A DNA stretch of 64,000 nucleotides from Dendrobates tinctorius (GCF_039654945.1 NW_027361824.1:10974001-11038000); one strand, 5' to 3'. Shown: positions 27,842 through 59,004, counted from the stretch's first letter. Notes: generated by a model from the letters alone, not told the origin. Program-made: numbers and translations.

Positions 27842-27987
27842 CTGGAAGAATAATACCGCAGCGTTCATAGTGTGGCTCCATGATATCCTAACGTAGCAAC
27901 GTGCACAAAGCCGGAGCCAAAAAAGGAAAAATGTTGCAAAACCGATGCGGCTCCGGGTCTCATTATCCTACTGTGTTCTCACCGTAC

Positions 27988-28070
27988 CTTGGCTGGCGAC
28001 AAAACCCTCCCTGAATGGCGCCAGCGATAAAACCGGAGCTCCGGACCGGAACACGGTCTGTACTGGGACT
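27988..28070 (-). CDS. PAAF1: PAAF1 exon 10
   Basis: 83 nt, VPVQTVFRSGAPVLSLAPFREGFVASQ, AG/GT bounded. Confidence 0.93.
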
Positions 28071-28155
28071 CTGTGAAGAAGCAATAAATGATGAAGGAAA
28101 TCGCTTGCTGTGCTGCGACGGTCCACACAAGGTCTGGAAGGGGGGGTTCACTTAC

Positions 28156-28271
28156 TTTGTGTTTCTAATGTCTAGCTGGTAGATATTACCGTCTTGACCC
28201 CCTCCTAAGACGTTCACGCTGGAGAGGAAAGTGCAACAGTTAAATGCGTCTGCGCCATCAAAGGTGAAGAC
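28156..28271 (-). CDS. PAAF1: PAAF1 exon 9
   Basis: 116 nt, VFTFDGADAFNCCTFLSSVNVLGGGQDGNIYQLDIRNT, AG/GT bounded. Confidence 0.93.
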
Positions 28272-28648
28272 CTGCAACATAAAAGACCCCAACATGGTAA
28301 ATGTGGTTTTCTTTAACAAACTGATCAATTCTTTTTATCACCACCAGAGGGAGCTGACTGCAAAGGAAGAAGCATTAATGTAGGCAATGAGTTCCCTCTG
28401 GTGGTGACTGCAGGCAGTAAAAATCGGTGACCAGAAAAATGCCCACACGGAAATTTGCCAATTGCAGCATCACAAAAGTTTCAGATCTATATTTGAGGTG
28501 CAAGGTGAGGATGTTCACATGATATGTGAAAATTGCCCACAGACATGAATACCCAAAGGAAAACAGTAGCGAGTTATAGGTGAGATGCTTTGCAGGACAG
28601 ACAATAGCATAGATCTATAGATTAAATGCTCTGCAGGACAGGGGGATA

Positions 28649-29533
28649 TGGTATGAATGAGTCACCTAGGAGGAGGAAAAAACAAAAAGCAAGCTAAGCC
28701 CAGAAAACCGGAGAGGTTGGTAACTAGCGGATTGCAGACCCCTGATCCTATCCACAACAACCAGCAGTAGCTGCGGAGCATGCCTACGGTGGTCCTAGAC
28801 GCCTCGTCACGGCCGGAGAACTAAATAAGCCTAAAGAAAGAAAGGGAAAATCTAAACTGCCCCAGAGCAGACCCCAAAGCAATAGACAGCCCCCAACATG
28901 TATTGTCGGTGAAATAAGATGAAAACACAGACACAGGTAGAAAGATAGGCTGAGCAAACGATGGGACCCTCGCTAACTAGAAAGGACAGGAAAGGAAAGC
29001 TGCTGTCTGCAATCACGCAAAAAACCCTGCCAAAAAGAATGTCCAACACGTCTGATAGAAAAAGGCCCTGAAGTCGCTAGACTTCAAATCACTATATCAG
29101 TACTCAGGTATATTCTGAAGACAGAGCAAAAGAGGTCAACTGATCAGAGACAAAATGGGGATTCAGCCCAGTCCCAGCTAGGGCTGGCTGAACACAAAAA
29201 CTAAGTAAACCAGATGAAAACTCATATGAACAATAGCAGAGAAAACTTAGCTTTAAGAAGGCAGGAATCAAACTGGAAACCAGGAGCCACAGTCAGGAAA
29301 AATCACCAGCAAGAAACTAGGGAGTCGGCTGCCCTAAATCCAATCAGAAACTCCTGATGTCCAATCGCAGTCCTCCTTCTCAGGTGGCCGGTCTCCGCCA
29401 TTTAGATCAGCTTCATTACCTCCCTTCATCAACAGAGGGAGTCCAGATAGAGAACTCACTACTCCTCTGTCAACACAGCCAGCTCCATAACCCTCACCAG
29501 AAGCCAGAGGCAAACCTGAAAAAGCTCACAACA
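28649..29533. mobile_element. Probable solo LTR nested in the MULE
   Basis: TGGTATGA...TCACAACA ends flanked by a GGGATA duplication, splitting a local ATAGGTGAGATGCTCTGCAGGACAG repeat. Confidence 0.6.
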
Positions 29534-29652
29534 GGGATAGTATACAGGTATAGGTGAGATGCTCTGCAGGGCAGGAGAATAATATAGAATTCTAGGTGAG
29601 ATGCTCTGCAGGACAGAGAATAGTATACAGGTATAGGTGAGATGCTCTGCAG

Positions 29653-29862
29653 CACATTTGCTTCAGCTTTTTGAGGGCAGGAGTCATGATAATGTTCTGT
29701 TGGTTCTTGAACTACGTTGTCATCTTTTGTTTTGAGAATTGAATGGCACTCTGAAGAGCGATGCAGTCGGCATCTCCAAGTCACCGCTGCGCTGATAGTA
29801 TGAAATGCAAGATATTCAAACCCCAAGTAAATCAGAACTTTGTTGTTCCTCTGTCTAGAATA
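29653..29862 (-). pseudogene. FLYWCH zinc-finger relic of a MULE transposase
   Basis: YSRQRNNKVLIYLGFEYLAFHTISAAVTWRCRLHRSSECHSILKTKDDNVVQEPTEHYHD fits the FLYWCH W-x-C...C...H-x-H pattern. Confidence 0.7.
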
Positions 29863-30483
29863 CTTTAGATGAACTCAAAATACACTTTTATTGAAAATAA
29901 ATTAAAAAATATGGGGATGGATCTATTAAAGTGCATGCTTTACCTAACCAAAACACAATGGGCTGGCACAGCAGGAACGCCATTGTCACTGGGGTTGTAC
30001 CAAAAGGAATGACAGGATTGCCAATTGGAAACAATGGGGGTGGGGGAGCGCTGGAAGGAACATGTGAAATAATGTCAACGAGGAAACCCAGTGACTTCCA
30101 TGGGCTCCACTGAAATACAGCACAACACAGACAGCAAAGAAAATGCAGAATGGATTTCACCCCAGGTCTCTGGGCCCAGCTTACTGCTCTGGGCTCTACA
30201 GGTTTGGTTCACTCATACCTAGTTCCAGAGGACAGATTCTGTTCTTACGAGCTGTCAGTCCACGCTCAGTGTGGTGTGTATGAGCCTAGAGACCCTTAAT
30301 CATATCCATTCTGCATTTTGTTTCATCCTATGCCTGCCTACACCTGCAGTATATGTGTGTGATACATAACTACGTAGGATCTGTTCACTCTTACTGTTGG
30401 TAGTCATAAGTGGACAGGGAAGGAAGTGCAGGCGCCAGATTCATAGAATCAATAGGAGAGCGGCGCTGCTATGGCACTTCCGG

Positions 30484-31933
30484 TGTAACAGGCCAGATTA
30501 ACCCCCAGCCCAGCATATACCTGGGGTTAAAGTGGTCTAGGCCAGATTATACCGCTCCAGTTCAGAATACACCCCAGATGTTGTAGATCAGGCAGCACAC
30601 GGGGCCCCAGGCAGCACACGGGGGGCAGAGACAGTGAACGGGGTCCCAGGCAGCACACAGGAGCAGAGACAGCGAAGGGGTTCCCAGGCAGCACATGGGG
30701 CCCCAGGCAGCGCACAGGAGCCTTAGGCCGGTTTCACATTAGCGTTTACGGCCGCGTCGGGCTGCGCACGGCCGCCGCTAAGCCCCGCCCCTCCGCCGGT
30801 AGCTTCACCTATGGGCGCATGACGCTGCATGCGTCCCCTATCTTTATCACTGAGGACGCAGGCCATGCGCAGTATGCGTTTGGCGGCGCCTGCGTCCTTT
30901 TGACGGTGTGCCGAGCACAACCAAATTGCAACAGGTTGCGTTTGACGCTGGTCGGTGCACCGTCAAAAGGACACAGGCGCCGCCAAAACGCCTACTGCGC
31001 ACGGCCTGCGTCCTCAGTGATAAAGATAGGGGACGCATGATGCATGCAGCGTCATGCGCCCGCGGGGCATAGCGGCGGCCGTGCGCAGCCCGACGCTGCG
31101 GCCGTAAACGCTAATGTGAAACCGGCCTTAGGCAGTGCACAGGGGCCCCAGGCAGAACACGGGGCCCCAGGCAGAGCACAGGGACCACAGGCAGCACACG
31201 GGGGTCCCGAGCAGTGCACAGGGGGTCGTCCCAAACAGCGCACAGGGGGTCCCAGACAGCACATAGGGGGGCAGAGAAAACATACAGGAGCCCTGCGGGC
31301 TGTCTCTTCCCCCCTTGCATGCTGTCTCTTCCCCCCCTTGCGTGCTGTCTCTGCCCCCCGTGCGCTGTCTAGGGTCCGTGTGCTAACTGGGGCCTCCGTG
31401 TGCTGCATGGGGCCCCGTGTGCTCCCTATGGCCCCTGTTCTCTACCTGGGGACCTGTTCTCTGCCTGGGGACCCCTGTGGGATGCCTGGGGACCCCTGTG
31501 GGATGCCTGGGGACCCCTGTGGGATGCCTGGGGACCCCTGTGGGATGCCTGGGGACACCTGTGCGAAGCCTGGGGACACCTGTGCGAAGCCTGGGGACCC
31601 CTGTGCGATGCCTGGGGCCCCGTGTGCTGCCGGGGGCCCCTGTGCTCTTCCTGGGGCCCCATGTGCTGCCTGTGGCCCCTGTGCTGTGTCTGGGCCCAGT
31701 GTTCTGCCTGGGGCCCCTGTGCACTGCCTGGGGCTCCTGTGCGCTGCCTGGGTCCCCCGTGTGCTTCCTAGGACTCTGTTTGCTGTCTCTGCCCCCCGTG
31801 TGCTGCCTGGGGCCCCGTGTACTGCCTGATCTACAGCAGCTGGGGTATATTCTGACCTGGAGGTGTATAATCTGGCCTAGGCCACTTTAACCACAGGTAT
31901 ATTCTGGGCGGGGGGTTAATCTGGCCTGTTACA
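30484..31933. mobile_element. Foldback non-autonomous DNA element with TGT...ACA termini (Ginger-like)
   Basis: TGTAACAGGCCAGATTAACCCCC... mirrored at the right end over more than 200 bp; flanks CCGG / CCAG. Confidence 0.6.
30726..31127. mobile_element. Palindromic PIF/Harbinger-like MITE
   Basis: TTA TSD; GGCCGGTTTCACATTAGCGTTTACGGCCGC TIRs; near-perfect 402-bp hairpin. Confidence 0.85.
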
Positions 31934-32806
31934 CCAGGTCCTCTGTTGGTCAGTGACATCACTATGTGCTCTTGTCTGCTGACCTGCCTGTCTTACGAGA
32001 GCCCGCAAGAACCAGGGCTCATCCCACTGAACGTCCGCACTCGATCCCCATGGGTAGAACATCACTCAGACAACACAGGGTGAGGGGAAACACACATTGG
32101 TAAGACTATTGGTTCACCAACAGGAAAAAACACAGAGGTGCTACACCTGCGGTCGCAGCGATGAAGGCCTCGAGCAGGCACGGGGGGGTACAGATGCCTG
32201 CTTCTGCTGGATCTCCGTCCTCACTGAAGACGCAGTTGCAGATGACATGCAGCGTGTTGCAGAGACCCGTCGGGTCCCTGCACTGCGATACATGCTGCAC
32301 TGCGACACATGCAATGGCTGTGAGCTGACGTCAGAGGTGCAGCCACAGGGAGCGGCGCATGACAATGGCGCACACTCCGATGTCAGCTGCAGGGCTGTGT
32401 GGTGGCTACAAAAGACACTGGGCGACGTGGGAGCAGAGGAAAGGTGAGCAGAATGTTTTTGTTTTTAAATATGCATTAGGGGCAGAACGGGGACATATAC
32501 ACAAGGATTGGGGACCATGTAAACCAGGATGGGGACATATATACCAAGAAGTGGGCATATATACCAGGATGGAGACCATGTGGACCATATATACCAGCAT
32601 TGGGCCATATACTGTTTCCCCGGATGCAGACATATTCACCAGGATGATGGGCATATATACCAGGATGGGGGACATTTTACTACATAATGAAGGGGGCAAT
32701 TCATGTCTGTATAGAATTTAGAACAATACAGGGGCCCATACATCTGATCAACATGTGTGTGTGGGGGGCAGGTCCAAATTTCGCACTGGGGCCCATCGGA
32801 GTCCAG

Positions 32807-35800
32807 TGTGATGGTGTGATATGCTATATGGATATCATTTTGTGTATATTGCTATATCACTGATTTGCATAGTGTTAATCTTGATGCTTTGTATGTCTGC
32901 AGCCTGACTTTTATCTATGACTCTTGATGACCCCCTGTAGTGTCATAATCCCCCAGGCACCTTTTGTCAAGTCTGGGAGGCCTGAAAACCACCAAACCAG
33001 TTTGACTCTCCCTGGACATAATGAAGGGGCTGGGCAAGTCAGTTGCTGTGTGCAGAGCATGGTGTGAAGACAGGACTTCGGAGAGAAAGAAGAATATATG
33101 GAACATGTTATCACTGTCAGCTGGATTTTGGACTCTCATCTCCCTGGACATGTTATACTGTTACTGAACTGCATTCAGATTCTGGACTATCTTATCCTTT
33201 GTGTGGTGGACTGAATATGGACCTTTTCGTATTTTTGCCTGAATAAAGGTCTTGGAATTGTTCACTCTCCTCTTGCTCTGTTGATTGTGTGATACCAGAG
33301 AAGGACCCAGTGACAATTGGTGGCAGCGGTGGGATCAACAGAGCGTAACCCAATGGAGAACCACCCACAGAGTGAGTACAGAAATTGGACTGTATCCAGT
33401 TTACAGGAGAGAGACAGAGACCTGGGCCTGAACTACCAGGGACTGACTAAAGAGGCCTTAATTGACCTACTGGTGGGTGCTAGTCAGACCATCTACTCCC
33501 ATATGTCTCAAGGACGAGCACTGGAGACAGGGATCCCCTTCCAGAAAAGCCAGTGGTTGGTGTGGTATGAAGAAGAGATGGCGGTTCTGGGCCCCGGCGT
33601 CTCTCAGGAGTACAAGGAGGAGGCTGCCCGCCGGGCACAGCGGAGACAGGAAGCAATGGAGCTTGAAAGAGGGAGTAACGCAATGTGGAGTTTAACCCCA
33701 ACAATCCGGGAGCCTGTACGGATCACCCGGACAGAGTTTAAGCCATTTGATGAGGCTTCTGGAGATGTGGAGGGGTTCTTCAAGGACTTTGAGCAGCAGT
33801 GTGCTGTGATGGAGGCGCCCCACTCTAGCTGGATGCGTTTGTTATTGGGGCTCCTGAACGGAAGCTTGGCGGAGGCTTACCGAACCATTGATGCACTGCG
33901 GAATCGGGATTATAACATTGTAAAGCGGACTATCCTGGATTACCATGCTATCACCCCAGACTCATATAGGGCCAAGTTCTGAGACCTCCCATGCACCACG
34001 GGGGGATCGTTTAGGATGTATGCACATAAGATGTCTCAGGCATGTCGGAGATGGCTGGAAGCAGAAAACGCCTTTACTGTGGAAGATGTTATACAGGCGT
34101 TCCTTATAGAACAATTTCTTGCCAAGTGCCCTGCAGAGGTACGGGAATGGGTCCGGGCGCGCACGCCGTGTACCGTGGATAGAGCTGCAGTCCTGACCGA
34201 TGAAGCCCTTACTATCCGACCGCAATGGAGGAGGCTTCTGGACAATGAACCACGGCCTGCTCCCGCGCCCCGTCCCCCTCCAATTATATCTGCCCTTCCA
34301 CCTAGTCGCAAGCCGCTGACTATCATGCCTCCCAATCCTAGGCCCCAACAGTTCCGACCACAACCTGGGGGTATCACAGAGAGGAGTTGTTATGGGTGTG
34401 GGCAACCTGGACATTTGCAGTTTGGATGTCCCTCAAGGATTCGAAGGGAGCCCCACCTCGTCCAGTGCATCTGGTGCACTCCATCCCGCCTGAGGAAGAG
34501 CTACCACCATCCCCACCAGAGTGGACCACCGACCACGGCACCATAGATACCCCTCCTGGAGTGTACGGACTCCGGCCTCTGTCCTTTAGCTACTCAGAGC
34601 AACGGCAACGCCACCTGCAGGATATCTTAATTGATGGATACAAAGTGTCAGGATTTAGAGACACGGGGGCATTTCTGACTATCAATGACCCCCGTGTGGT
34701 TCGACCCAAGGCAATTCACCAGGGTCCGGAAATTCCCATTGTCTTGGCGGGGGGTGCCCGCAAATATATACAGCGAGCTTTGGTGCGTTTGGATTATGGT
34801 TTTGGAGAAAAACTGTGTTGGATTGGAGTTATGGGAGGACTTCCTGCAGATATCCTCCTTGGGAACGACATTGGGGAGTTACAGTGTCATTTTGTGGGAG
34901 CAGTCACCCGACTACAGGCCCTTCAAGCACCACCACATCCGGACCCCACTGAGGAGCAATCTGTTTGGCCAGAAGGTCCGTGGGCCTCTCACTCTTCTGA
35001 AAGAACAATTGGAGGGAGATATCGCAGATATTGGAATGCCGATCATTCTCTACGTTCTAGAGTTTAGAGTTCAGAGATCGTCTCGCCCAGCTAGTGGCTA
35101 ATGATCAACAGCAAATGGCCCAGTCCAGTCAAGAAACCTGGTATGACTGTAACACCAGGACCCGGGAATTTATGGAAGGACATCAAGTGCTTATAATTAT
35201 TGCAACCCCTGCCACTGTACAAGGAACTATAAACGATTGAGCAATGTGGACTATAGTGAGCAGGCCAGAGGTCTGTGTAGACCTCATAGCGTGCTCACTT
35301 ATTATGGGGGGGGGGGGGGGGGGAGAGGTTGTGATGGTGTGATATGTTATATGGATATCATTTTGTGTATATTGCTATTTCAGTGATTTGCATAGTATTA
35401 ATCTTGATGCCTTGTATGTCTGCAGCCTGACTTCTATCTATGACTCTTGATGACCCCCTGTAGTGTCATAATCCCCCAGGCACCTTTTGTCAAGTCTGGG
35501 AGGCCTGAAAACCGCCAAACCGGTTTGACTCTCCCTGGACATAATGAGGGGGCTGGGGAGGATAGGGACTGGGGAGGATAGGGGCTGGGCAAGTCAGTTG
35601 CTGTGTGCAGAGCATGGTGTGAAGACAGGACTTCGGAGAGAAAGAAGAATATATGGAACATGTTATCACTGTCAGCTGGATTTTGGACTCTCATCTCCCT
35701 GGACATGTTATACTGTTACTGAACTGCATTCAGATTCTGGACTATCTTTTCCTTTGTGTGGTGGACTGAATATGGACCTTTCATATTTTTGCCTAAATAA

Positions 35801-35869
35801 ATGTCTTGGAATTGTTCACTCTCCTCTTGCTCTGTTGATTGTGTGATACCAAAGAAGGACCCCGTGACA
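32807..35869 (+). mobile_element. Gypsy (Gmr1-like) LTR retrotransposon, gag-protease only, non-autonomous
   Basis: LTRs 32807-33315 and 35330-35869 (TGT...ACA); CCAG TSD; PBS TGGTGGCAGCGGTGGGAT (tRNA-Leu-like) at 33318; G-run PPT at 35306-35328. Confidence 0.92.
33353..35067 (+). pseudogene. Disrupted gag (SCAN-like domain, CCHC knuckle) and aspartic protease of the LTR element
   Basis: In-frame TGA at 33980; IEQFLAKCPAEVREWV (SCAN-like); CYGCGQPGHLQFGC; frameshift near 34450; protease DTGA ... ILLGND. Confidence 0.85.
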
Positions 35870-36549
35870 CCAGTTACACCACTGCAAAAACATATACATT
35901 CACAGCAAGAACACAAGGTGGTACAAGTTTCGGCTGTGCCTTCTGGGCTTCCAGGAACAACCATCTCTGCCAGCAGCTCCCTGCTTTTGGTGGCCTCCAA
36001 CTGAGACGATAATGTATTAGATGTGCCCTGCAGTCCCATGTAACTCCACAGATAACACAGTGATACTTTTGTGTGTACTGATAGCAGTGATGGCTCCTCT
36101 GGATCAGACTGCTGCTGGTTCTGCTTGTGCTGCTGGTTTGGGCTGGTGGGAGGCGTAAGGCAGAATCAGTGAGAGATGAGAGCAGACTAGATCTATTGCT
36201 GATAATGACAGACTGCTACAGGCACAGATCTTCATTTTTGCAGTTTTGCACTAGATCAACTGTAAATCACAAGTTAATCACATATCATGTGAACATTCTC
36301 ACCTTGTACCTCAAAAATCATAGATCTTAAACTTTGTGATGCTGCATTTGGCAATTTTCCATGTGGGCATTTTTACTGTGGGCAATTTTCCTGTGGGCAT
36401 TTTTCAGGGAACCATAAAAATCGGACCACCAGAAATCTTACACCCTATCGCGGCCATATAAAGTGCTGCGCCATAGTTTGGTGCGATATAAACAAACACG
36501 ATGATATCATATGCAGATGAGGGGTCCAGATCTCCGAGTCATTACTTAC

Positions 36550-36641
36550 AGACTGGCGGCTCTGCAGACTCTTGGCTTCCAGTTTCCCGTCTTCTCTAGC
36601 CAGCAGCAGTAACTTTCCTTCACTCCCGATTTCCCGGTCAC
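36550..36641 (-). CDS. PAAF1: PAAF1 exon 8
   Basis: 92 nt, DREIGSEGKLLLLAREDGKLEAKSLQSRQS. Confidence 0.94.
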
Positions 36642-37460: not shown

Positions 37461-40400
37461 AATTATAGTAGATATATTACTGTATACAGGGGCAGTATTA
37501 TAGTAGTTATATTCTTGTACATAGGAGCAGTATTATAGTAGTTATATTCTTGTATATAGGGGCAGTATTATAGTAGTTACAGAATATTCTTGTACACAGG
37601 GGGCAGTATTATAGTAGTTATATTATTGTACATAGGAGCAGTATTATAGTAGTTATATTCTTGTACATAGGAGCAGTATTATAGTAGTTATATTCTTGTA
37701 CATAGGAGCAGTATTATAGTAGTTATATTCTTGTACATAGGAGCAGTATTATAGTAGTTATATTCTTGTATATAGGGGGCAGTATTATAGTAGTTATATT
37801 ATTGTACATAGGGGGCAGTATTATAGTAGTTATATTCTTGTACATAGGGGGCAGTATTATAGTAGTTATATTCTTGTACATAGGGGGCAGTATTATAGTA
37901 GTTATATTCTTGTACATAGGAGCAGTATTATAGTAGTTACAGAATATTCTTGTACATAGGGGGCAGTATTATAGTAGTTATATTATTGTATATAGGAGCA
38001 GTATTATAGTAGTTATATTCTTGTATATAGGGGCAATATTATAGTAGTTATATTATTGTACATAGGGGGCAGTATTATAGTAGTTATATTCTTGTACATA
38101 GGGGGCAGTATTATAGTAGTTATATTCTTGTACATAGGGGGCAGTATTATAGTAGTTATATTCTTGTACATAGGAGCAGTATTATAGTAGTTATATTATT
38201 GTACATAGGGGCAGTATTATAGTAGTTATATTCTTGTATATAGGGGGCAGTATTATAGTAGTTATATTCTTGTATATAGGGGCAGTATTATAGTAGTTAT
38301 ATTCTTGTACATAGGAGCAGTATTATAGTAGTTATATTATTGTACATAGGGGCAGTATTATAGTAGTTATATTCTTGTATATAGGGGGCAGTATTATAGT
38401 AGTTATATTCTTGTACATAGGGGCAGCATTATAGTAGTTATATTCTTGCACATAGGGGCAGTATTATAGTAGTTATATTCTTGTATATAGGGGGCAGTAT
38501 TATAGTAGTTATATTCTTGTACATAGGGGGCAGTATTATAGTAGTTATATTCTTGTACATAGGAGCAGTATTATAGTAGTTATATTATTGTACATAGGGG
38601 CAGTATTATAGTAGTTATATTATTGTATACAGGGGGCAGTATTATAGTAGTTATATTCTTGTATATAGGGGCAGTATTATAGTAGTTATATTCTTGTACA
38701 TAGGGGGCAGTATTATAGTAGTTATATTCTTGTACATAGGAGCAGTATTATAGTAGTTATATTCTTGTATATAGGGGGCAGTATTATAGTAGTTATATTC
38801 TTGTACATAGGGAGCAGTATTATAGTAGTTATATTCTTGTACATAGGAGCAGTATTATAGTAGTTATATTCTTGTATATAGGAGGCAGTATTATAGTAGT
38901 TATATTCTTGTACATAGGAGGCAGTATTATAGTAGTTATATTCTTGTACATAGGGGCAGCATTATAGTAGTTATATTCTTGCACATAGGGGCAGTATTAT
39001 AGTAGTTATATTATTGTACATAGGGGCAGTATTATAGTAGTTATATTCTTGTATATAGGGGGCAGTATTATAGTAGTTATATTCTTGTACATAGGGGGCA
39101 GTATTATAGTAGTTATATTATTGTACATAGGGGCAGTATTATAGTAGTTATATTCTTGTATATAGGGGGCAGTATTATAGTAGTTATATTCTTGTACATA
39201 GGGGGCAGTATTATAGTAGTTATATTCTTGTACATAGGGGCAGTATTATAGTAGTTATATTCTTGTACATAGGGGGCAGTATTATAGTAGTTATATTCTT
39301 GTATATAGGGGCAGTATTATAGTAGTTATATTCTTGTACATAGGGGGCAGTATTATAGTAGTTATATTATTGTACATAGGGGCAGTATTATAGTAGTTAT
39401 ATTCTTGTATATAGGGGGCAGTATTATAGTAGTTATATTCTTGTACATAGGGGCAGCATTATAGTAGTTATATTCTTGCACATAGGGGCAGTATTATAGT
39501 AGTTATATTCTTGTACATAGGGGGCAGTATTATAGTAGTTATATTCTTGTACATAGGGGGCAGTATTATAGTAGTTATATTCTTGTACATAAAGGCAGTA
39601 TTATAGTAGTTATATTCCTGTACATAGGAGCAGTATTATAATAGCTATATTCTTGTACATAGGGAGCAGTATTATAGTGGTTATATTCTTGTACATAGGG
39701 AACAGTATTATAGTAGTTATATTATTGTACATAGGGAACAGTATTATAGTAGTTATATTATTGTACATAGGAGCAGTATTATAGTAGTTATATTATTGTA
39801 CATAGGGAACAGTATTATTGTAGTTATATTATTGTACATAGGGGCAGTCTTATAGTAGTTATATTCTTGTACATAGGGGGCAGTGTTATAGTAGTTATAT
39901 TCTTGTACATAGGAGGCAGTATTATAGTAGTTATATTCTTGTACATAGGGGCAGTATTATAGTAGTTATATTCTTGTATATAGGGGGCAGTATTATAGTA
40001 GTTATATTCTTGTACATAGGGGCAGTATTATAGTAGTTATATTCTTGTACATAGGAGCAGTATTATAGTAGTTATATTCTTGTATATAGGGGGCAGTATT
40101 ATAGTAGTTATATTCTTGTACATAGGGGCAGTATTATAGTAGTTATATTCTTGTACATAGGAGCAGTATTATAGTAGTTATATTCTTGTACATAAAGGCA
40201 GTATTATAGTAGTTATATTCCTGTACATAGGAGCAGTATTATAATAGCTATATTCTTGCACATAGGGAGCAGTATTATAGTGGTTATATTCTTGTACATA
40301 GGGAACAGTATTATAGTAGTTATACTATTGTACATAGGGAACAGTATCATAGTAGTTATATTATTGTACATAGGAGCAGTATTATAGTAATTATATTATT

Positions 40401-43400
40401 GTACATAGGGGGCAGTATTATAGTAGTCATATTCTTGTACATAGGGGCAGTATTATAGTAGTTATATTCTTGTGCATAGGGGCAGTATTATAGTAGTTAT
40501 ATTCCTGTACATAGGAGCAGTATTATAATAGCTATATTCTTGTACATAGGAGCAGTATTATAATAGCTATATTCTTGTACATAGGGGCAGTATTATAGTA
40601 GTTATATTCTTGTACATAGGGGGCAGTATTATAGTAGTTATATTCTTGCACATAAAGGCAGTATTATAGTAGTTATATTCTTGTACATAGAAGCAGTATT
40701 ATAGTAGTTATATTCTTGTACATAAAGGCAGTATTATAGTAGTTATATTCTTGTACATAGGGGCAGTATTATAGTAGTTATATTCTTGTACATAGGAGCA
40801 GTATTATAGTAGCTATATTCTTGTATATAGGGGCAGTATTATAGTAGTTACAGAATATTCTTGTACATAGGGGGTAGTATTATAGTAGTTATATTCTTGT
40901 ACATAGGAGCAGTATTATAGTAGTTATATTCTTGTACATAGGAGCAGTATTATAGTAGCTATATTCTTGTATATAGGGGGCAGTATTATAGTAGTTATAT
41001 TATTGTATATAGGGGGCAGTATTATAGTAGTTATATTCTTGTACATAGGGGGCAGTATTATAGTAGTTATATTCTAGTACATAGGAGCAGTATTATAGTA
41101 GTTACAGAATATTCTTGTACATAGGGGGCAGTATTATAGTAGTTATATTATTGTATATAGGAGCAGTATTATAGTAGTTATATTCTTGTATATAGGGGCA
41201 GTATTATAGTAGTTATATTCTTGTACATAGGGGGCAGTATTATAGTAGTTATATTCTTGTACATAGGAGCAGTATTATAGTAGTTATATTATTGTACAAA
41301 GGGGCAGTATTATAGTAGTTATATTCTTGTATATAGGGGGCAGTATTATAGTAGTTATATTCTTGTATATAGGGGCAGTATTATAGTAGTTATATTCTTG
41401 TACATAGGGGGCAGTATTATAGTAGTTATATTCTTGTACATAGGAGCAGTATTATAGTAGTTATATTATTGTACATAGGGGCAGTATTATAGTAGTTATA
41501 TTCTTGTATATAGGGGGCAGTATTATAGTAGTTATATTCTTGTACATAGGGGCAGCATTATAGTAGTTATATTCTTGCACATAGGGGCAGTATTATAGTA
41601 GTTATATTCTTGTATATAGGGGGCAGTATTATAGTAGTTATATTCTTGTACATAGGGGGCAGTATTATAGTAGTTATATTCTTGTACATAGGAGCAGTAT
41701 TATAGTAGTTATATTATTGTACATAGGGGCAGTATTATAGTAGTTATATTATTGTATATAGGGGGCAGTATTATAGTAGTTATATTCTTGTATATAGGGG
41801 CAGTATTATAGTAGTTATATTCTTGTACATAGGGGGCAGTATTATAGTAGTTATATTCTTGTACATAGGAGCAGTATTATAGTAGTTATATTATTGTACA
41901 TAGGGGCAGTATTATAGTAGTTATATTCTTGTATATAGGGGGCAGTATTATAGTAGTTATATTCTTGTACATAGGGGCAGCATTATAGTAGTTATATTCT
42001 TGCACATAGGGGCAGTATTATAGTAGTTATATTCTTGTATATAGGGGGCAGTATTATAGTAGTTATATTCTTGTACATAGGGGGCAGTATTATAGTAGTT
42101 ATATTCTTGTACATAGGGGGCAGTATTATAGTAGTTATATTCTTGTACATAAAGGCAGTATTATAGTAGTTATATTCCTGTACATAGGAGCAGTATTATA
42201 ATAGCTATATTCTTGTACATAGGGAGCAGTATTATAGTGGTTATATTCTTGTACATAGGGAACAGTATTATAGTAGTTATATTATTGTACATAGGGAACA
42301 GTATTATAGTAGTTATATTATTGTACATAGGAGCAGTATTATAGTAGTTATATTATTGTACATGGGAGCAGTATTATAGTAGCTATATTATTGTACATAG
42401 GGGCAGTATTATAGTAGTTATATTATTGTACATAGGGAACAGTATTATAGTAGTTATATTATTGTACATAGGGGCAGTCTTATAGTAGTTATATTCTTGT
42501 ACATAGGGGGCAGTGTTATAGTAGTTATATTCTTGTACATAGGAGGCAGTATTATAGTAGTTATATTCTTGTACATAGGGGCAGTATTATAGTAGTTATA
42601 TTCTTGTATATAGGGGGCAGTATTATAGTAGTTATATTCTTGTACATGGGGCAGTATTATAGTAGTTATATTCTTGTACATAGGGGGCAGTATTATAGTA
42701 GTTATATTCTTGTACATAAAGGCAGTATTATAGTAGTTATATTCCTGTACATAGGAGCAGTATTATAATAGCTATATTCTTGCACATAGGGAGCAGTATT
42801 ATAGTGGTTATATTCTTGTACATAGGGAACAGTATTATAGTAGTTATATTATTGTACATAGGGAACAGTATTATAGTAGTTATATTATTGTACATAGGAG
42901 CAGTATTATAGTAGTTATATTATTGTACATAGGGGGCAGTATTATAGTAGTTATATTCTTGTACATACGGGCAGTATTATAGTAGTTATATTCTTGTGCA
43001 TAGGGGCAGTATTATAGTAGTTATATTCCTGTACATAGGAGCAGTATTATAATAGCTATATTCTTGTACATAGGAGCAGTATTATAATAGCTATATTCTT
43101 GTACATAGGGGCAGTATTATAGTAGTTATATTCTTGTACATAGGGGCAGTATTATAGTAGTTATATTCTTGTACATAGGGGCAGTATTATAGTAGTTATA
43201 TTCCTGTACATAGGAGCAGTATTATAATAGCTATATTCTTGTACATAGGGGCAGTATTATAGTAGTTATATTCTTGTACATAGGGGGCAGTATTATAGTA
43301 GTTATATTCTTGTACATAGGGGGCAGTATTATAGTAGTTATATTCTTGTACATAGGAGCAGTATTATAGTAGTTATATTCTTGTTCATAGGGGGCAGTAT

Positions 43401-43975
43401 TATAGTAGTTATATTCTTGTACATAGGGGCTGTATTATAGTAGTTACATTCTTGTACATAGGAGCAGTATTATAGTAGTTATATTCTTGTACATAGGGGC
43501 TGTATTATAGTAGTTACATTCTTGTACATAGGAGCAGTATTATAGTAGTTATATTCTTGTACATAGGGGCTGTATTATAGTAGTTATATTCTTGTACATA
43601 GGAGCAGTATTATAGTAGTTATATTCTTGTACATAGGGGGCAGTATTATAGTAGTTATATTCTTGTACATAGGGGGCAGTATTATAGTAGTTATAGTCTT
43701 GTACATAGGGGCAGTATTATAGTAGTTATATTCTTGTACATAGGGGCTGTATTATAGTAGTTATATTCTTGTACATAGGAGCAGTATTATAGTAGTTATA
43801 TTATTGTACATAGGGGCAGTATTATAATAGTTATATTCTTGTATATAGGAGGCAGTATTATAGTAGTTATATTCTTGTATATAGGAGGCAGTATTATGGT
43901 AGTTATATTCTTGTACATAGGGAGCAGTATTATAGTACTTATATTATTGTACATAGGGGGCAGTATTATAGTATT
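37461..43975. repeat. 33-34-bp AT-rich minisatellite (GGGGCAGTATTATAGTAGTTATATTCTTGTACATA)n
   Basis: 6.5-kb array occupying almost all of PAAF1 intron 4, with higher-order duplicated variant blocks. Confidence 0.98.
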
Positions 43976-57920: not shown

Positions 57921-59004
57921 TCTGTATTGGGCCCTCTACTATTTAATACATTTATTAATGATCTAGTGGATGGCTTACACAGTAAAATATCAGTATTTGC
58001 AGATGATACAAAACTATGTAAGGTAGTTAACACAAAGGAGGACAGTTTGCAACTACAGACAGATTTGAGTAAATTGGAGAATTGGGCTGAAAAATGGCAA
58101 ATGAGGTTTAACACAGATAAGTGTAAGGTTATGCACATGGGAAGGAGAAACAGATGCTACAATTACTTACTAAATGGGAAACTGCTGGGGAAATCAGACA
58201 TGGAAAAAGACTTAGGCATCTTAGTCAATAAGAAGCTAAATTGGAGTGCCCAGTGTCAGGCAGCTGCCACCAAAGCAAATAGGGTCATGGGATACATTAG
58301 AAGAGGTCTGGGGACACGAGATGAAAACATAATTCTCCCTCCGTACGAATCACTCATCAGACCACACTTGGAGGATTGTGTGCAATTTTGGACGCTGGTG
58401 CTCAAGAAAGACATTACTGAACTTGAAAGGGTTCAAAGGCGGGCTACTAAAATGATAAATGGAGTTGGTTCACTACAATACCCAGAAAGGTTATCAAAAT
58501 TAGGTCTATTTACTCTAGACAAGAGAAGACTTAGGGGAGACCTAATATATATGTACAAGTATATCAGAGGGCAACACAGAGATCTCTCCAATGAACTGTT
58601 TGTACCAAGGACTGTGACAAGAACAAGGGGGCATTCTCTTCGTTTGGAGGAAAGACCATTTCTGCACCATCATAGAAGAGGGTTCTTCACGGTAAGAGCA
58701 GTGAGGCTCTGGAATTCTCTTCCTGAGGAAGTGGTGATGGCCAACTCACTGAATGAATGGAAGAAAGGAATGGAGGCTTTTCTTGTGAGTAACAGTATAG
58801 AAGGTTACAAATAACAGAATATTATAGGTAGATGATTGACCCAGCTTAGGGGAAGGAATTTTTTTCCCTATGGAGAAAATTAGCTTCTACTCTGTGGGTT
58901 TTTTACCTTCCCCAGGATCAACAATGCAGAACAGCTGCACTAAAATAGGCTGAACTAGATGGACATAAGGTCTTCCTTCAGCCTTCAAAACTATGTTACT
59001 ATGT
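57921..59004 (+). mobile_element. 5'-truncated CR1 LINE (ORF2 C-terminus open to 58814)
   Basis: SVLGPLLF...FADDTKL...WQMRFNTDKCKVMH...LERVQRRATK; 3' end CTATGTTACTATGT; inserted into an inverted-repeat element (56860-57110 mirrored at 59005-59170). Confidence 0.9.

What the first reader, a model, noticed from the sequence alone, without database searches (positions are those of the whole stretch)
28426..36413. 8-kb Mutator-like 'Russian doll' accounts for about 97% of PAAF1 intron 8
Seen: imperfect long TIRs with GG...CC ends, a 9-bp TSD (GTAAAAATC/ATAAAAATC) and a FLYWCH relic; removing the element leaves a 281-bp intron. Nested inside are a solo LTR, a Ginger-like foldback that itself holds a Harbinger-like MITE, and an LTR retrotransposon inserted near the end of a probable further MITE. 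Established: 9-bp TSDs, long TIRs and FLYWCH domains characterise animal MULEs. MULEs are, to my knowledge, poorly described in tetrapods, so this may be an uncatalogued family.
Basis: partly seen in the sequence, partly recalled or inferred. Interest (0 to 1): 0.7.

Follow-up and report, generated by a model that had tools for sequence, protein, structure and literature searches.

The report
Dead Mutator transposon filling frog intron
An 8-kb stretch that makes up nearly all of one intron of a poison-frog WD40 gene is a broken, passenger-only copy of a Mutator-type (Phantom/Muta-like) jumping gene with four later insertions inside it. It matters mildly, because true Mutator elements in vertebrates have been doubted.

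Summary
Window 28426-36413 is one insertion. It has about 105-136-bp terminal inverted repeats (90% alike) and GG...CC ends. It is flanked by GTAAAAATC/ATAAAAATC, which reads best as a 9-bp duplication (8 or 10 bp not excluded).

It carries residues 7-75 of a FLYWCH+MULE transposase, 82% identical to an intact 452-aa protein of Ranitomeya variabilis. The DDE domain is deleted.

The ends have the same build as mosquito Muta1: a roughly 9-bp imperfect palindrome, then 12-bp repeats spaced 15 bp apart.

Contigs from four frog species show three things:
- The family is multi-copy in all four.
- Other copies lack the 885-bp insert, which is a solo LTR with a 6-bp duplication.
- Orthologous flanks in three other species stop matching just before the insertion site.

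The foldback, the TTA-flanked MITE and the gag-only LTR element are structurally confirmed. The "further MITE" is not.

Removing the element leaves a 281-bp intron. The PAAF1 name and the intron number were not tool-verified.

This scan already found this transposon kind, with the same 452-aa transposase length, on other DNA of this genome (s1-366829, s1-369604). Verdict: a new member of a known kind, ordinary as a copy, moderately interesting as a family.

The parts
28417..28425 (.). Left target-site duplication GTAAAAATC
   Evidence: Matches 36414-36422 at 8 of 9 positions. The shared 10-mer TAAAAATCGG also allows an 8- or 10-bp reading.
28426..36413 (-). Whole non-autonomous Phantom/Muta-type MULE copy (7988 bp); the transposase sense is the minus strand, the same as the host gene
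28426..28541 (+). 3' TIR in transposase sense: terminal motif GGTGACCAG, then 12-mers AAAWTGCCCACA at 28436-47 and 28530-41
   Evidence: Summed contig depth jumps from 6 to 1867 at about 28422 in run X1.
28557..28648 (.). 41-bp minisatellite, left part (continues at 29534-29652), lying downstream of the lost transposase gene
   Evidence: Other copies join 28642 directly to 29534.
28649..29533 (.). Nested solo LTR: TG...CA ends, 6-bp duplication GGGATA (28643-48 / 29534-39), hugely abundant in the source species
   Evidence: a joint skipping 891 bp with 6 shared letters in all 4 runs. Summed depth is 1.2-1.8 million in X1 against 6 in the flank.
29534..29652 (.). 41-bp minisatellite, right part, ending at the internal deletion breakpoint (about 29652/29653)
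   Evidence: The X10 loose end at 29654 continues the transposase reading frame (VARSKMREDM), which our copy does not.
29644..29853 (-). Transposase relic, residues about 7-75; the FLYWCH zinc finger lies at 29686-29862 by Pfam
   Evidence: PF04500, E 2.9e-6; 82% identity to P0166 aa 1-76; no other part of the protein anywhere in the window
29854..29855 (-). Site of a 37-bp deletion that removed the element's splice acceptor, its ATG and its first codons
   Evidence: the X11 joint 29853->29856 carries 39 extra letters that read, on the minus strand, acceptor-TGCTAACA-ATG GAG TTT TCA AAA AGC (MEFSKS). The X10 loose end at 29857 shows the same.
29856..30483 (-). Remains of the element's 5'-UTR intron. 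It is a mosaic and holds a small 43-bp inverted-repeat unit at 30136-30323.
   Evidence: the X11 contig fits again from 29856 for 67 or more letters, and depths differ along the stretch. One search shows the inverted repeat.
30484..31933 (.). Nested foldback element: TGTAACAGG ends, 180-bp arms 90% alike, about 20-bp tandem repeats, flanked by CCGG/CCAG
   Evidence: The Ginger1 label was not tested beyond the ends and the 4-bp duplication.
30726..31127 (.). MITE inside the foldback: GGCCGGTTTCACA... inverted repeats, TTA duplication at 30723-25 / 31128-30
   Evidence: (I8, I23, I25)
31934..32806 (-). More of the element's interior (5'-UTR intron region) with about 20-40-bp tandem repeats at 32480-32680
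   Evidence: No protein family hit.
32807..35869 (+). Nested gag-only LTR retrotransposon: LTRs at 32807-33315 and 35330-35869 (97.2% alike), primer-binding site from 33318, G-rich tract at 35307-28, CCAG duplication, gag with SCAN-like and CCHC domains, no pol
35922..36152 (-). Homologue of the 5' exons of the autonomous element's gene model (36152-36054 and 35975-35922)
   Evidence: matches aa 12-61 of P0242 (R. variabilis, 510 aa), which continue directly into MEFSKSQ...
36278..36413 (-). 5' TIR: terminal motif (reverse complement GGTTCCCTG), three exact 12-mers at 36362-73, 36377-88 and 36392-403, plus one degenerate 12-mer
   Evidence: The X11 loose end at 28529 reads the inner sequence of this arm.
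36414..36422 (.). Right target-site duplication ATAAAAATC
28272..36549 (-). Host intron (8278 bp) of a WD40-repeat gene, between exons ending at 36550 and starting at 28271
   Evidence: GTAAGT donor and AG acceptor; the reading frame ...SLQSRQS|VFTFDGADAF... is continuous.

Best explanation
This is one old insertion of a non-autonomous deletion derivative of a Phantom/Muta-type Mutator-like element (MULE).

How it got there. The family's own 452-aa transposase (N-terminal FLYWCH zinc finger plus a MULE DDE core) was supplied in trans. By analogy with Muta1, it is inferred to bind the 12-bp subterminal repeats, cut at the palindromic end motif, and join the ends to a staggered cut in the target. 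Repair of that cut leaves a 9-bp duplication.

Layout of the element, in transposase sense (minus strand):
1. 5' TIR.
2. Short 5' exons.
3. A 5'-UTR intron.
4. Transposase codons 7-75.
5. A 41-bp minisatellite.
6. 3' TIR.

What this copy has lost. One deletion runs from about codon 75 to the minisatellite and removes the DDE core. A second, 37-bp deletion removes the element's splice acceptor and start codon. The copy therefore encodes nothing and is inert unless mobilised in trans.

What came later. A solo LTR landed in the minisatellite. A foldback element and a gag-only LTR retrotransposon landed in the element's own intron. A TTA-flanked MITE landed in the foldback.

Timing. The insertion appears specific to the source species' lineage.

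Shown: the structure, the protein kinship, the multi-copy status, and the absence of the nested solo LTR from other copies. Inferred: the transposition chemistry, the 9-bp rule for the family, and the empty site in relatives.
For: Ends and flanks
- The TIR pair has E 2e-30 and is 90% alike.
- A perfect 10-mer flanks both ends, and only the 9-bp reading keeps the arms in register.
- The 12-mer AAAWTGCCCACA occurs exactly five times in 64 kb. All five are in the two ends, inverted relative to each other. Allowing one mismatch adds a sixth match elsewhere (58377-58388), and none of 100 shuffles reaches 6 matches.
- This is the Muta1 build: 8-9-bp duplication, a 10-bp imperfect palindrome, then 12-bp repeats with 3-4-bp linkers (PMC5499845).

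Protein kinship
- The relic hits FLYWCH above Pfam's cut-off.
- It is 82% identical to aa 1-76 of P0166, a 452-aa protein with FLYWCH at 3-62 and MULE at 175-266.
- The DGTF / DFE / CxFHL / TTNCCEG motifs are aligned.
- The right subterminal segment matches the 5' exons of P0242's gene model, which lead straight into the same transposase.

Other copies
- Family contigs of other species read MEFSKS upstream of our relic and VARSKMREDM downstream of it, exactly as in P0166.
- An X1 contig spans our deletion junction (29620-29798), so this derivative has at least one more copy.
- TIR-bin depth is 70 to about 1000 times the flank depth in the four runs.
- The joint 28642->29534 appears in all four runs.
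- Flank contigs of X8, X10 and X11 fit up to 28412-28418. Those of X8 and X10 then run on for 366 and 678 unlike letters at single-copy depth.
Against: - The duplication is imperfect (8/9) and could be read as 8 or 10 bp.
- The outermost 9 bp of the two arms agree at only 6 of 9 positions.
- No second copy with both flanks could be read, so the family's duplication length is untested.
Shared TIRs between this copy and the transposase gene are therefore inferred only from the 5'-exon homology.
- The relatives' flank contigs stop 8-14 bp short of the junction, and what follows in them was not shown, so an exact empty site is not proven.
Confidence: 0.9

Rival explanations
1. The TIR element belongs to another superfamily with 8-bp duplications (hAT, Merlin or P). 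On this view the FLYWCH piece is an unrelated MULE fragment that merely sits inside it.
For: TAAAAATC is a perfect 8-bp repeat. The element's interior is a mosaic of several repeat families with different depths.
Against: - With an 8-bp duplication the two ends fall out of register.
- The ends lack hAT-type termini and instead have the Muta1-type build.
- The segment next to the right TIR matches 5' exons that are spliced onto the same MULE transposase in R. variabilis.
- The TIR and FLYWCH bins have similar depth in X1, about 1900-2500 against 1800-2200.
- The minisatellite-to-FLYWCH junction recurs in another X1 contig.
Confidence: 0.04
2. It is not one insertion. Two separate family members, or solo ends, happen to lie 8 kb apart in inverted orientation, with unrelated intron DNA between them.
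For: The arms differ by 10% and by a 30-bp indel. Most of the interior has no recognisable MULE sequence.
Against: - The same 10-mer sits immediately outside both ends.
- Left to right, the order is TIR, minisatellite, transposase N-terminus, 5' exons, TIR. That is exactly the order of one element read on the minus strand.
- Relatives' single-copy contigs leave the reference at the left junction.
Confidence: 0.04
3. The FLYWCH open frame is a host exon or a domesticated FLYWCH gene fragment rather than a transposon remnant.
For: It lies in the same sense as the host gene and is open for 118 codons.
Against: - It breaks into minisatellite sequence after codon 75.
- It lacks a start codon and a splice acceptor.
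- It is multi-copy in four species.
- Its best matches are transposases with a MULE DDE core.
Confidence: 0.02

Closest known systems
Muta1 of Aedes aegypti (Phantom clade of MULEs; Liu and Wessler 2017, PMC5499845)
   Same: - An 8-9-bp duplication.
- A TIR over 100 bp built from a roughly 10-bp imperfect palindromic end motif followed by 12-bp subterminal repeats with about 3-bp linkers.
- The family's autonomous member encodes a single DDE MULE transposase.
   Different: - Only 2-4 subterminal repeats per end here, against 9 in Muta1.
- The arms are 90% alike here, against 97%.
- The host is a frog.
- This copy has lost the DDE core.
- The autonomous frog relatives appear to carry a 5'-UTR intron.
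Phantom family (Marquez and Pritham 2010, as summarised in Dupeyron et al. 2019, PMC6446971, group 20)
   Same: - An N-terminal FLYWCH finger on a MULE transposase.
- 8-10-bp duplications.
- Long and variable TIRs.
- A minisatellite after the transposase gene, as reported for aphid members.
   Different: The hosts listed for Phantom are flatworms, arthropods, tunicates and an ichnovirus. No vertebrate member was accepted in that survey. I did not place the frog proteins in a tree together with reference Phantom sequences.
Frog FLYWCH-MULE transposases: XP_077119382.1 (R. variabilis, 452 aa), XP_069618114.1 (R. imitator, 448 aa) and Anomaloglossus baeobatrachus LOC142296608
   Same: - The relic here is 74-82% identical to their first 76 residues (74% to the truncated R. 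imitator model P0195).
- The 5' subterminal segment matches the upstream exons of XP_077148276.1.
   Different: Those proteins are full-length and open. This copy keeps only codons 7-75. Their flanking DNA (TIRs and duplications) could not be read here.
Earlier notes of this scan on other DNA of the same genome (s1-366829, s1-369604)
   Same: They describe the same kind of dead Phantom-type MULE copy and the same 452-aa transposase.
   Different: This is a different locus. It adds the Muta1-like end build, presence/absence across species, and a four-fold nest of later insertions.

Membership tests
Mutator-like elements (MULE), Phantom/Muta type | The family's autonomous member encodes a DDE transposase with the MULE domain (PF10551) and the CxxH motif | tested here: met
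   P0166, P0247 and P0151 hit MULE above the cut-off. DGTF, DFE, GCxFHL and TTNCCEG are aligned.
Mutator-like elements (MULE), Phantom/Muta type | This copy derives from such an element, that is, it shares coding sequence with it | tested here: met
   82% identity to P0166 aa 1-76. Family contigs of other species continue the ORF on both sides of the relic.
Mutator-like elements (MULE), Phantom/Muta type | N-terminal FLYWCH zinc finger (the Phantom trait) | tested here: met
   PF04500, E 2.9e-6, full profile
Mutator-like elements (MULE), Phantom/Muta type | 8-10-bp (typically 9-bp) target-site duplication | tested here: met
   This copy has a 9-bp duplication with 8 of 9 identical. The length in other copies could not be tested.
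Mutator-like elements (MULE), Phantom/Muta type | Long TIRs (over 100 bp) with subterminal repeats | tested here: met
   Arms of about 105 and 136 bp, 90% alike. Five exact 12-mers, found only in the two ends.
Mutator-like elements (MULE), Phantom/Muta type | The same TIRs flank the autonomous copy | not testable with these tools
The only indirect support is the 5'-exon homology.
Solo LTR | TG...CA ends, a short duplication, and absence from other copies of the host element | tested here: met
   885 bp with a GGGATA duplication, skipped by contigs in 4 runs. No full-length parent element was examined.
Ginger1 DNA transposon (the foldback) | TGTNR termini and a 4-bp duplication | tested here: met
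   TGTAACAGG ends; CCGG/CCAG flanks differing by one CpG-type change
Ginger1 DNA transposon (the foldback) | Integrase-like Ginger transposase in the family's autonomous member | not tested
   No coding sequence in the foldback, and no other copies were read.
PIF/Harbinger MITE | 3-bp TWA duplication and short TIRs | tested here: met
   TTA on both sides; arms 95-97% complementary (I8, I23, I25). No transposase link was tested.
Gypsy/Gmr1-like LTR retrotransposon | Two LTRs, primer-binding site, polypurine tract, 4-bp duplication, gag with a CCHC knuckle | tested here: met
   The SCAN-like gag domain scores E 2.9e-10.
Gypsy/Gmr1-like LTR retrotransposon | Gmr1 gene order (integrase before reverse transcriptase) | not testable with these tools
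   pol is absent from this copy.

The most novel reading that the evidence does not exclude
Dendrobatoid frogs carry a genuine MULE family whose named relatives are all arthropod. It kept transposing after the sampled species split, and it still has open 448-452-aa transposase genes in Ranitomeya. That would make it the first vertebrate Mutator element that could still be active. It plausibly arrived by horizontal transfer from arthropods.
Probability: 0.4. Interest if true: 0.7.

Novelty: new member of a known kind. Interest (0 to 1): 0.45.

Why it matters
Dupeyron et al. 2019 found no convincing MULE in vertebrates and listed their absence as an open question. This locus gives a full set of MULE hallmarks in a tetrapod:
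- Muta1-type ends.
- A 9-bp duplication.
- A FLYWCH-MULE transposase relic tied to intact frog genes.

It also gives evidence that the family is multi-copy in at least four related frogs, and that this copy inserted after they diverged.

For the host gene, one transposon plus its passengers expanded a 281-bp intron about 30-fold. That is a small, clean example of how poison-frog introns and genomes grow.

As a single dead copy it has no expected function.

Tried and rejected
- No other copy of any component exists in the 64-kb window.
- The word search with the 118-aa relic found only one 113-aa fragment, because of the length window. The full-length kin came from the profile-free search and from a second word search with P0151.
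- Both metagenome scans were blank: one with protein P0001 and one with a 26-nt TIR pattern.
- The viral-contig scan with alignment A2 was blank. Alignment A1 was too diverse to use.
- Pfam found nothing in nine other open frames of the element's own segments. There is therefore no sign of a captured host gene (Pack-MULE).
- A search for inverted repeats around the LTR element's insertion site found only a small local palindrome at 32231-32304. The 'further MITE' is dropped.
- I considered placing the element's true end at 28435/36404. The flanks would then match at only 6 of 9 positions and the 10-mer repeat would be unexplained, so this was rejected.
- PAAF1 could not be checked. The exons resemble PAAF1 as I remember it, which is a lead only.
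- Marquez and Pritham 2010 is not held in the library.


Full report
OBSERVATION

The two ends of 28426-36413 are inverted repeats. Positions 28435-28529 pair with 36374-36278 at 88.8% over 98 bp (E 2e-30). An end-to-end alignment gives 99 of 110 identical, plus one 30-bp indel. The indel is two extra 15-bp units on the right arm.

The ends read GGTGACCAG... and ...CAGGGAACC. Immediately outside lie GTAAAAATC (28417-25) and ATAAAAATC (36414-22). Because the element starts with GG and the right flank also continues with GG, the shared string is a perfect 10-mer. Of the 8-, 9- and 10-bp readings, only 9 bp keeps the two arms in register: GGT, CC and G of the first nine bases then agree, and the following AAAAATGCCCACA aligns without a gap.

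The host intron runs on the minus strand from the GTAAGT donor at 36549 to the AG acceptor at 28272. The frame ...SLQSRQS|VFTFDGADAF... stays open across it. The intron is 8278 bp.

The host exons are WD40-like. The name PAAF1 and the intron number rest on memory and were not tested.

WHAT THE ELEMENT IS

The minus-strand frame 29521-29874 matches Pfam FLYWCH over the whole profile (E 2.9e-6, 27.8 bits against a cut-off of 23.6).

A word search limited by length found one fragment, P0001, at 65% identity. A scan of all representatives with P0001 found many proteins of 444-465 aa with one N-terminal FLYWCH. Pfam shows these carry the MULE transposase domain. They share the DGTF, DFE, GCxFHL and TTNCCEG motifs.

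A second word search with the full-length P0151 then found named frog proteins:
- P0166 = XP_077119382.1 of Ranitomeya variabilis, 452 aa, mislabelled 'TIMELESS-interacting protein'.
- Cluster mates in R. imitator and Anomaloglossus baeobatrachus.

P0166 has FLYWCH at 3-62 and MULE at 175-266. Our relic is 82% identical to its first 76 residues. tblastn of five frog proteins and thirteen relatives finds no other part of the transposase anywhere in the window. The DDE core is therefore gone from this copy.

END ARCHITECTURE

The 12-mer AAAWTGCCCACA occurs exactly five times in the 64 kb: twice at the left end on the plus strand and three times at the right end on the minus strand, with a 15-bp period. 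With one mismatch allowed there is a sixth match elsewhere, and none of 100 shuffles reaches six.

Together with the 9-bp near-palindromic end motif, this is the build described for Muta1. [quoted passage not shown] Its transposase binds those repeats (PMC5499845).

A 41-bp minisatellite (28557-28648 plus 29534-29652) lies where Phantom elements of aphids carry a minisatellite after the transposase gene (PMC6446971).

EVIDENCE FROM OTHER COPIES AND OTHER SPECIES

I laid Logan contigs of four runs on 27900-30480. Run X1 is the probable source species. Runs X8, X10 and X11 are three other organisms whose flanks are 88-92% alike to the window.

1. An X1 contig crosses the left junction with no difference from the window.

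2. Summed contig depth rises from 6 to about 1900-2500 at the TIR in X1. It rises 70- to about 1000-fold in the others. The FLYWCH bins are also multi-copy. The tool warns that summed depth is not a copy number, so I claim only 'multi-copy'.

3. Contigs in all four runs join 28642 to 29534 with six letters shared. The 885 bp in between (TG...CA ends, GGGATA duplicated) is therefore a later insertion in our copy, with the marks of a solo LTR. Its family is enormously abundant in X1.

4. An X11 contig carries 39 letters where ours has 2 (at 29854-55). On the minus strand these letters read a pyrimidine tract, AG, TGCTAACA, then ATG GAG TTT TCA AAA AGC. That gives MEFSKS followed by our QRNNKVLIYLG, which is the N-terminus of P0166. 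An X10 loose end shows the same. Our copy has thus lost the acceptor, the start codon and six codons.

5. An X10 loose end at 29654 continues the frame as VARSKMREDM, exactly as P0166 does. Ours instead runs into the minisatellite. That fixes the large deletion at about 29652/29653.

6. An X1 contig spans that junction (29620-29798), so the deletion derivative itself exists in more than one copy.

7. An X11 loose end at 28529 reads the inner sequence of our right arm, so that arm's interior belongs to the family.

8. Single-copy flank contigs of X8, X10 and X11 fit up to 28412-28418. Those of X8 and X10 then run on for 366 and 678 letters unlike anything in the laid stretch. If those species had the element, the contigs should have entered the multi-copy TIR and stopped there, as the X1 contig does. 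I read this as absence of the element at this site in the relatives. The right flank was not in the laid stretch and the run-on letters were not shown, so an exact empty site is inferred, not seen.

LINK BETWEEN THE RIGHT END AND THE TRANSPOSASE

P0242 (R. variabilis, 510 aa) has 62 extra N-terminal residues ahead of MEFSKSQ. Residues 12-43 and 44-61 match our minus strand at 36152-36054 and 35975-35922: 39 of 50 identical, with a 27-residue gap in ours.

The segment next to our right TIR is therefore the homologue of the 5' exons of the frog transposase gene model. Those exons are spliced to the acceptor just upstream of the ATG. This explains why about 2 kb of the element's own sequence separates the right TIR from the FLYWCH relic. 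That sequence is the element's 5'-UTR intron, and it is where the foldback and the LTR element landed.

THE OTHER NESTED ELEMENTS

- Foldback, 30484-31933. It has TGTAACAGG ends, 180-bp arms 90% alike, and internal tandem repeats of about 20 bp. It is flanked by CCGG/CCAG, which differ by one CpG-type change. This fits Ginger1's end and duplication rule, but no transposase link was tested.
- MITE inside the foldback, 30726-31127. Its arms are 95-97% complementary and it has a TTA duplication. Removing it restores the foldback's repeat unit.
- LTR element, 32807-35869. It has LTRs of 509 and 540 bp with 14 mismatches in 508 aligned positions (97.2%) and one 31-bp indel. It has a primer-binding site from 33318, a G-rich tract before the 3' LTR, and a CCAG duplication. 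Its gag carries a SCAN-like domain (E 2.9e-10) and a weak CCHC knuckle (17.8 bits, below Pfam's 20.8 cut-off), and there is no pol.
- The 'further MITE'. No inverted repeat supports it.

MECHANISM

Shown: the copy has the cis features of a Muta-type MULE and lacks any transposase.

Inferred from Muta1 biochemistry: the FLYWCH-MULE transposase supplied by an autonomous relative bound the subterminal 12-mers. It cut via a hairpin on the flanking DNA and joined the 3'-OH ends to a 9-bp staggered target.

The two internal deletions are of the kind left by interrupted gap repair, which is established knowledge for cut-and-paste elements. The insertion post-dates the split from the three other sampled species, whose flanks diverge by 7.5-11%. 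It pre-dates the LTR element, whose LTRs have diverged by 2.8%.

RELATIVES AND NOVELTY

In a quick maximum-likelihood tree of 64 proteins, the five frog sequences form one clade with 100% SH-aLRT support. That clade sits inside a 36-row clade, also 100% supported, whose named members are all arthropods: a spider, two beetles, a mosquito and a caddisfly. P0166 is 72.6% identical to the spider protein over 420 residues.

This pattern is what horizontal transfer would give. However, the root is a midpoint only, most rows are unnamed, and no donor test was run.

The library holds no paper describing MULEs in poison frogs. Anuran repeat tables list only a RepeatMasker 'MULE-MuDR' class. Dupeyron et al. 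doubt all vertebrate MULEs.

Two earlier notes of this scan, on other DNA of this genome, describe this transposon kind and a 452-aa transposase of the same length. I reached the same protein independently. This locus is therefore a further member, not a first sighting.

VERDICT

As a copy it is dead and ordinary. As a family it is a well-documented vertebrate MULE. Interest 0.45.

Noticed in passing
window 37462-43973: A 6.5-kb minisatellite of a 35-bp unit, about 183 copies at 92% match. It is AT-rich with strong G-over-C skew. It lies in the next intron of the same gene.
   Followed up: partly
window 28340-28408: A small palindromic, MITE-like unit (CACCACCAGAGGGA... and its reverse complement) lies 9 bp from the MULE insertion site. 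It is multi-copy in all four runs, with summed depth of 117-422 against 6-19 in the flank.
   Followed up: partly
window 30127-30330: A 43-bp inverted repeat (30136-78 / 30281-323) sits inside the MULE's interior. Its depth in runs X8 and X11 is far above that of the neighbouring FLYWCH part, so it is probably one more small nested repeat.
   Followed up: partly
window 29854-29855: The 37-bp deletion removed exactly the element's own splice acceptor and ATG. The element lies in the same sense as the host gene, so loss of an acceptor inside the host intron may have been favoured. This is speculation only.
   Followed up: no
proteins P0166 and P0246 (not in the window): NCBI gene models in Ranitomeya variabilis mislabel or fuse this transposase. 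XP_077119382.1 is named 'TIMELESS-interacting protein isoform X1'. XP_077111481.1 (859 aa) joins about 410 unrelated N-terminal residues to the full transposase.
   Followed up: partly
proteins and the tree: The frog FLYWCH-MULE transposases nest among arthropod ones and reach 72.6% identity to a spider protein. This pattern suggests horizontal transfer. Direction and donor were not tested.
   Followed up: partly
window 28683-29030: The solo LTR's family reaches summed contig depths of 1.2-1.8 million in the source species. Only its 28683-28860 part is abundant in run X10, and it is nearly absent in X8 and X11. This points to a very large, lineage-specific burst.
   Followed up: no
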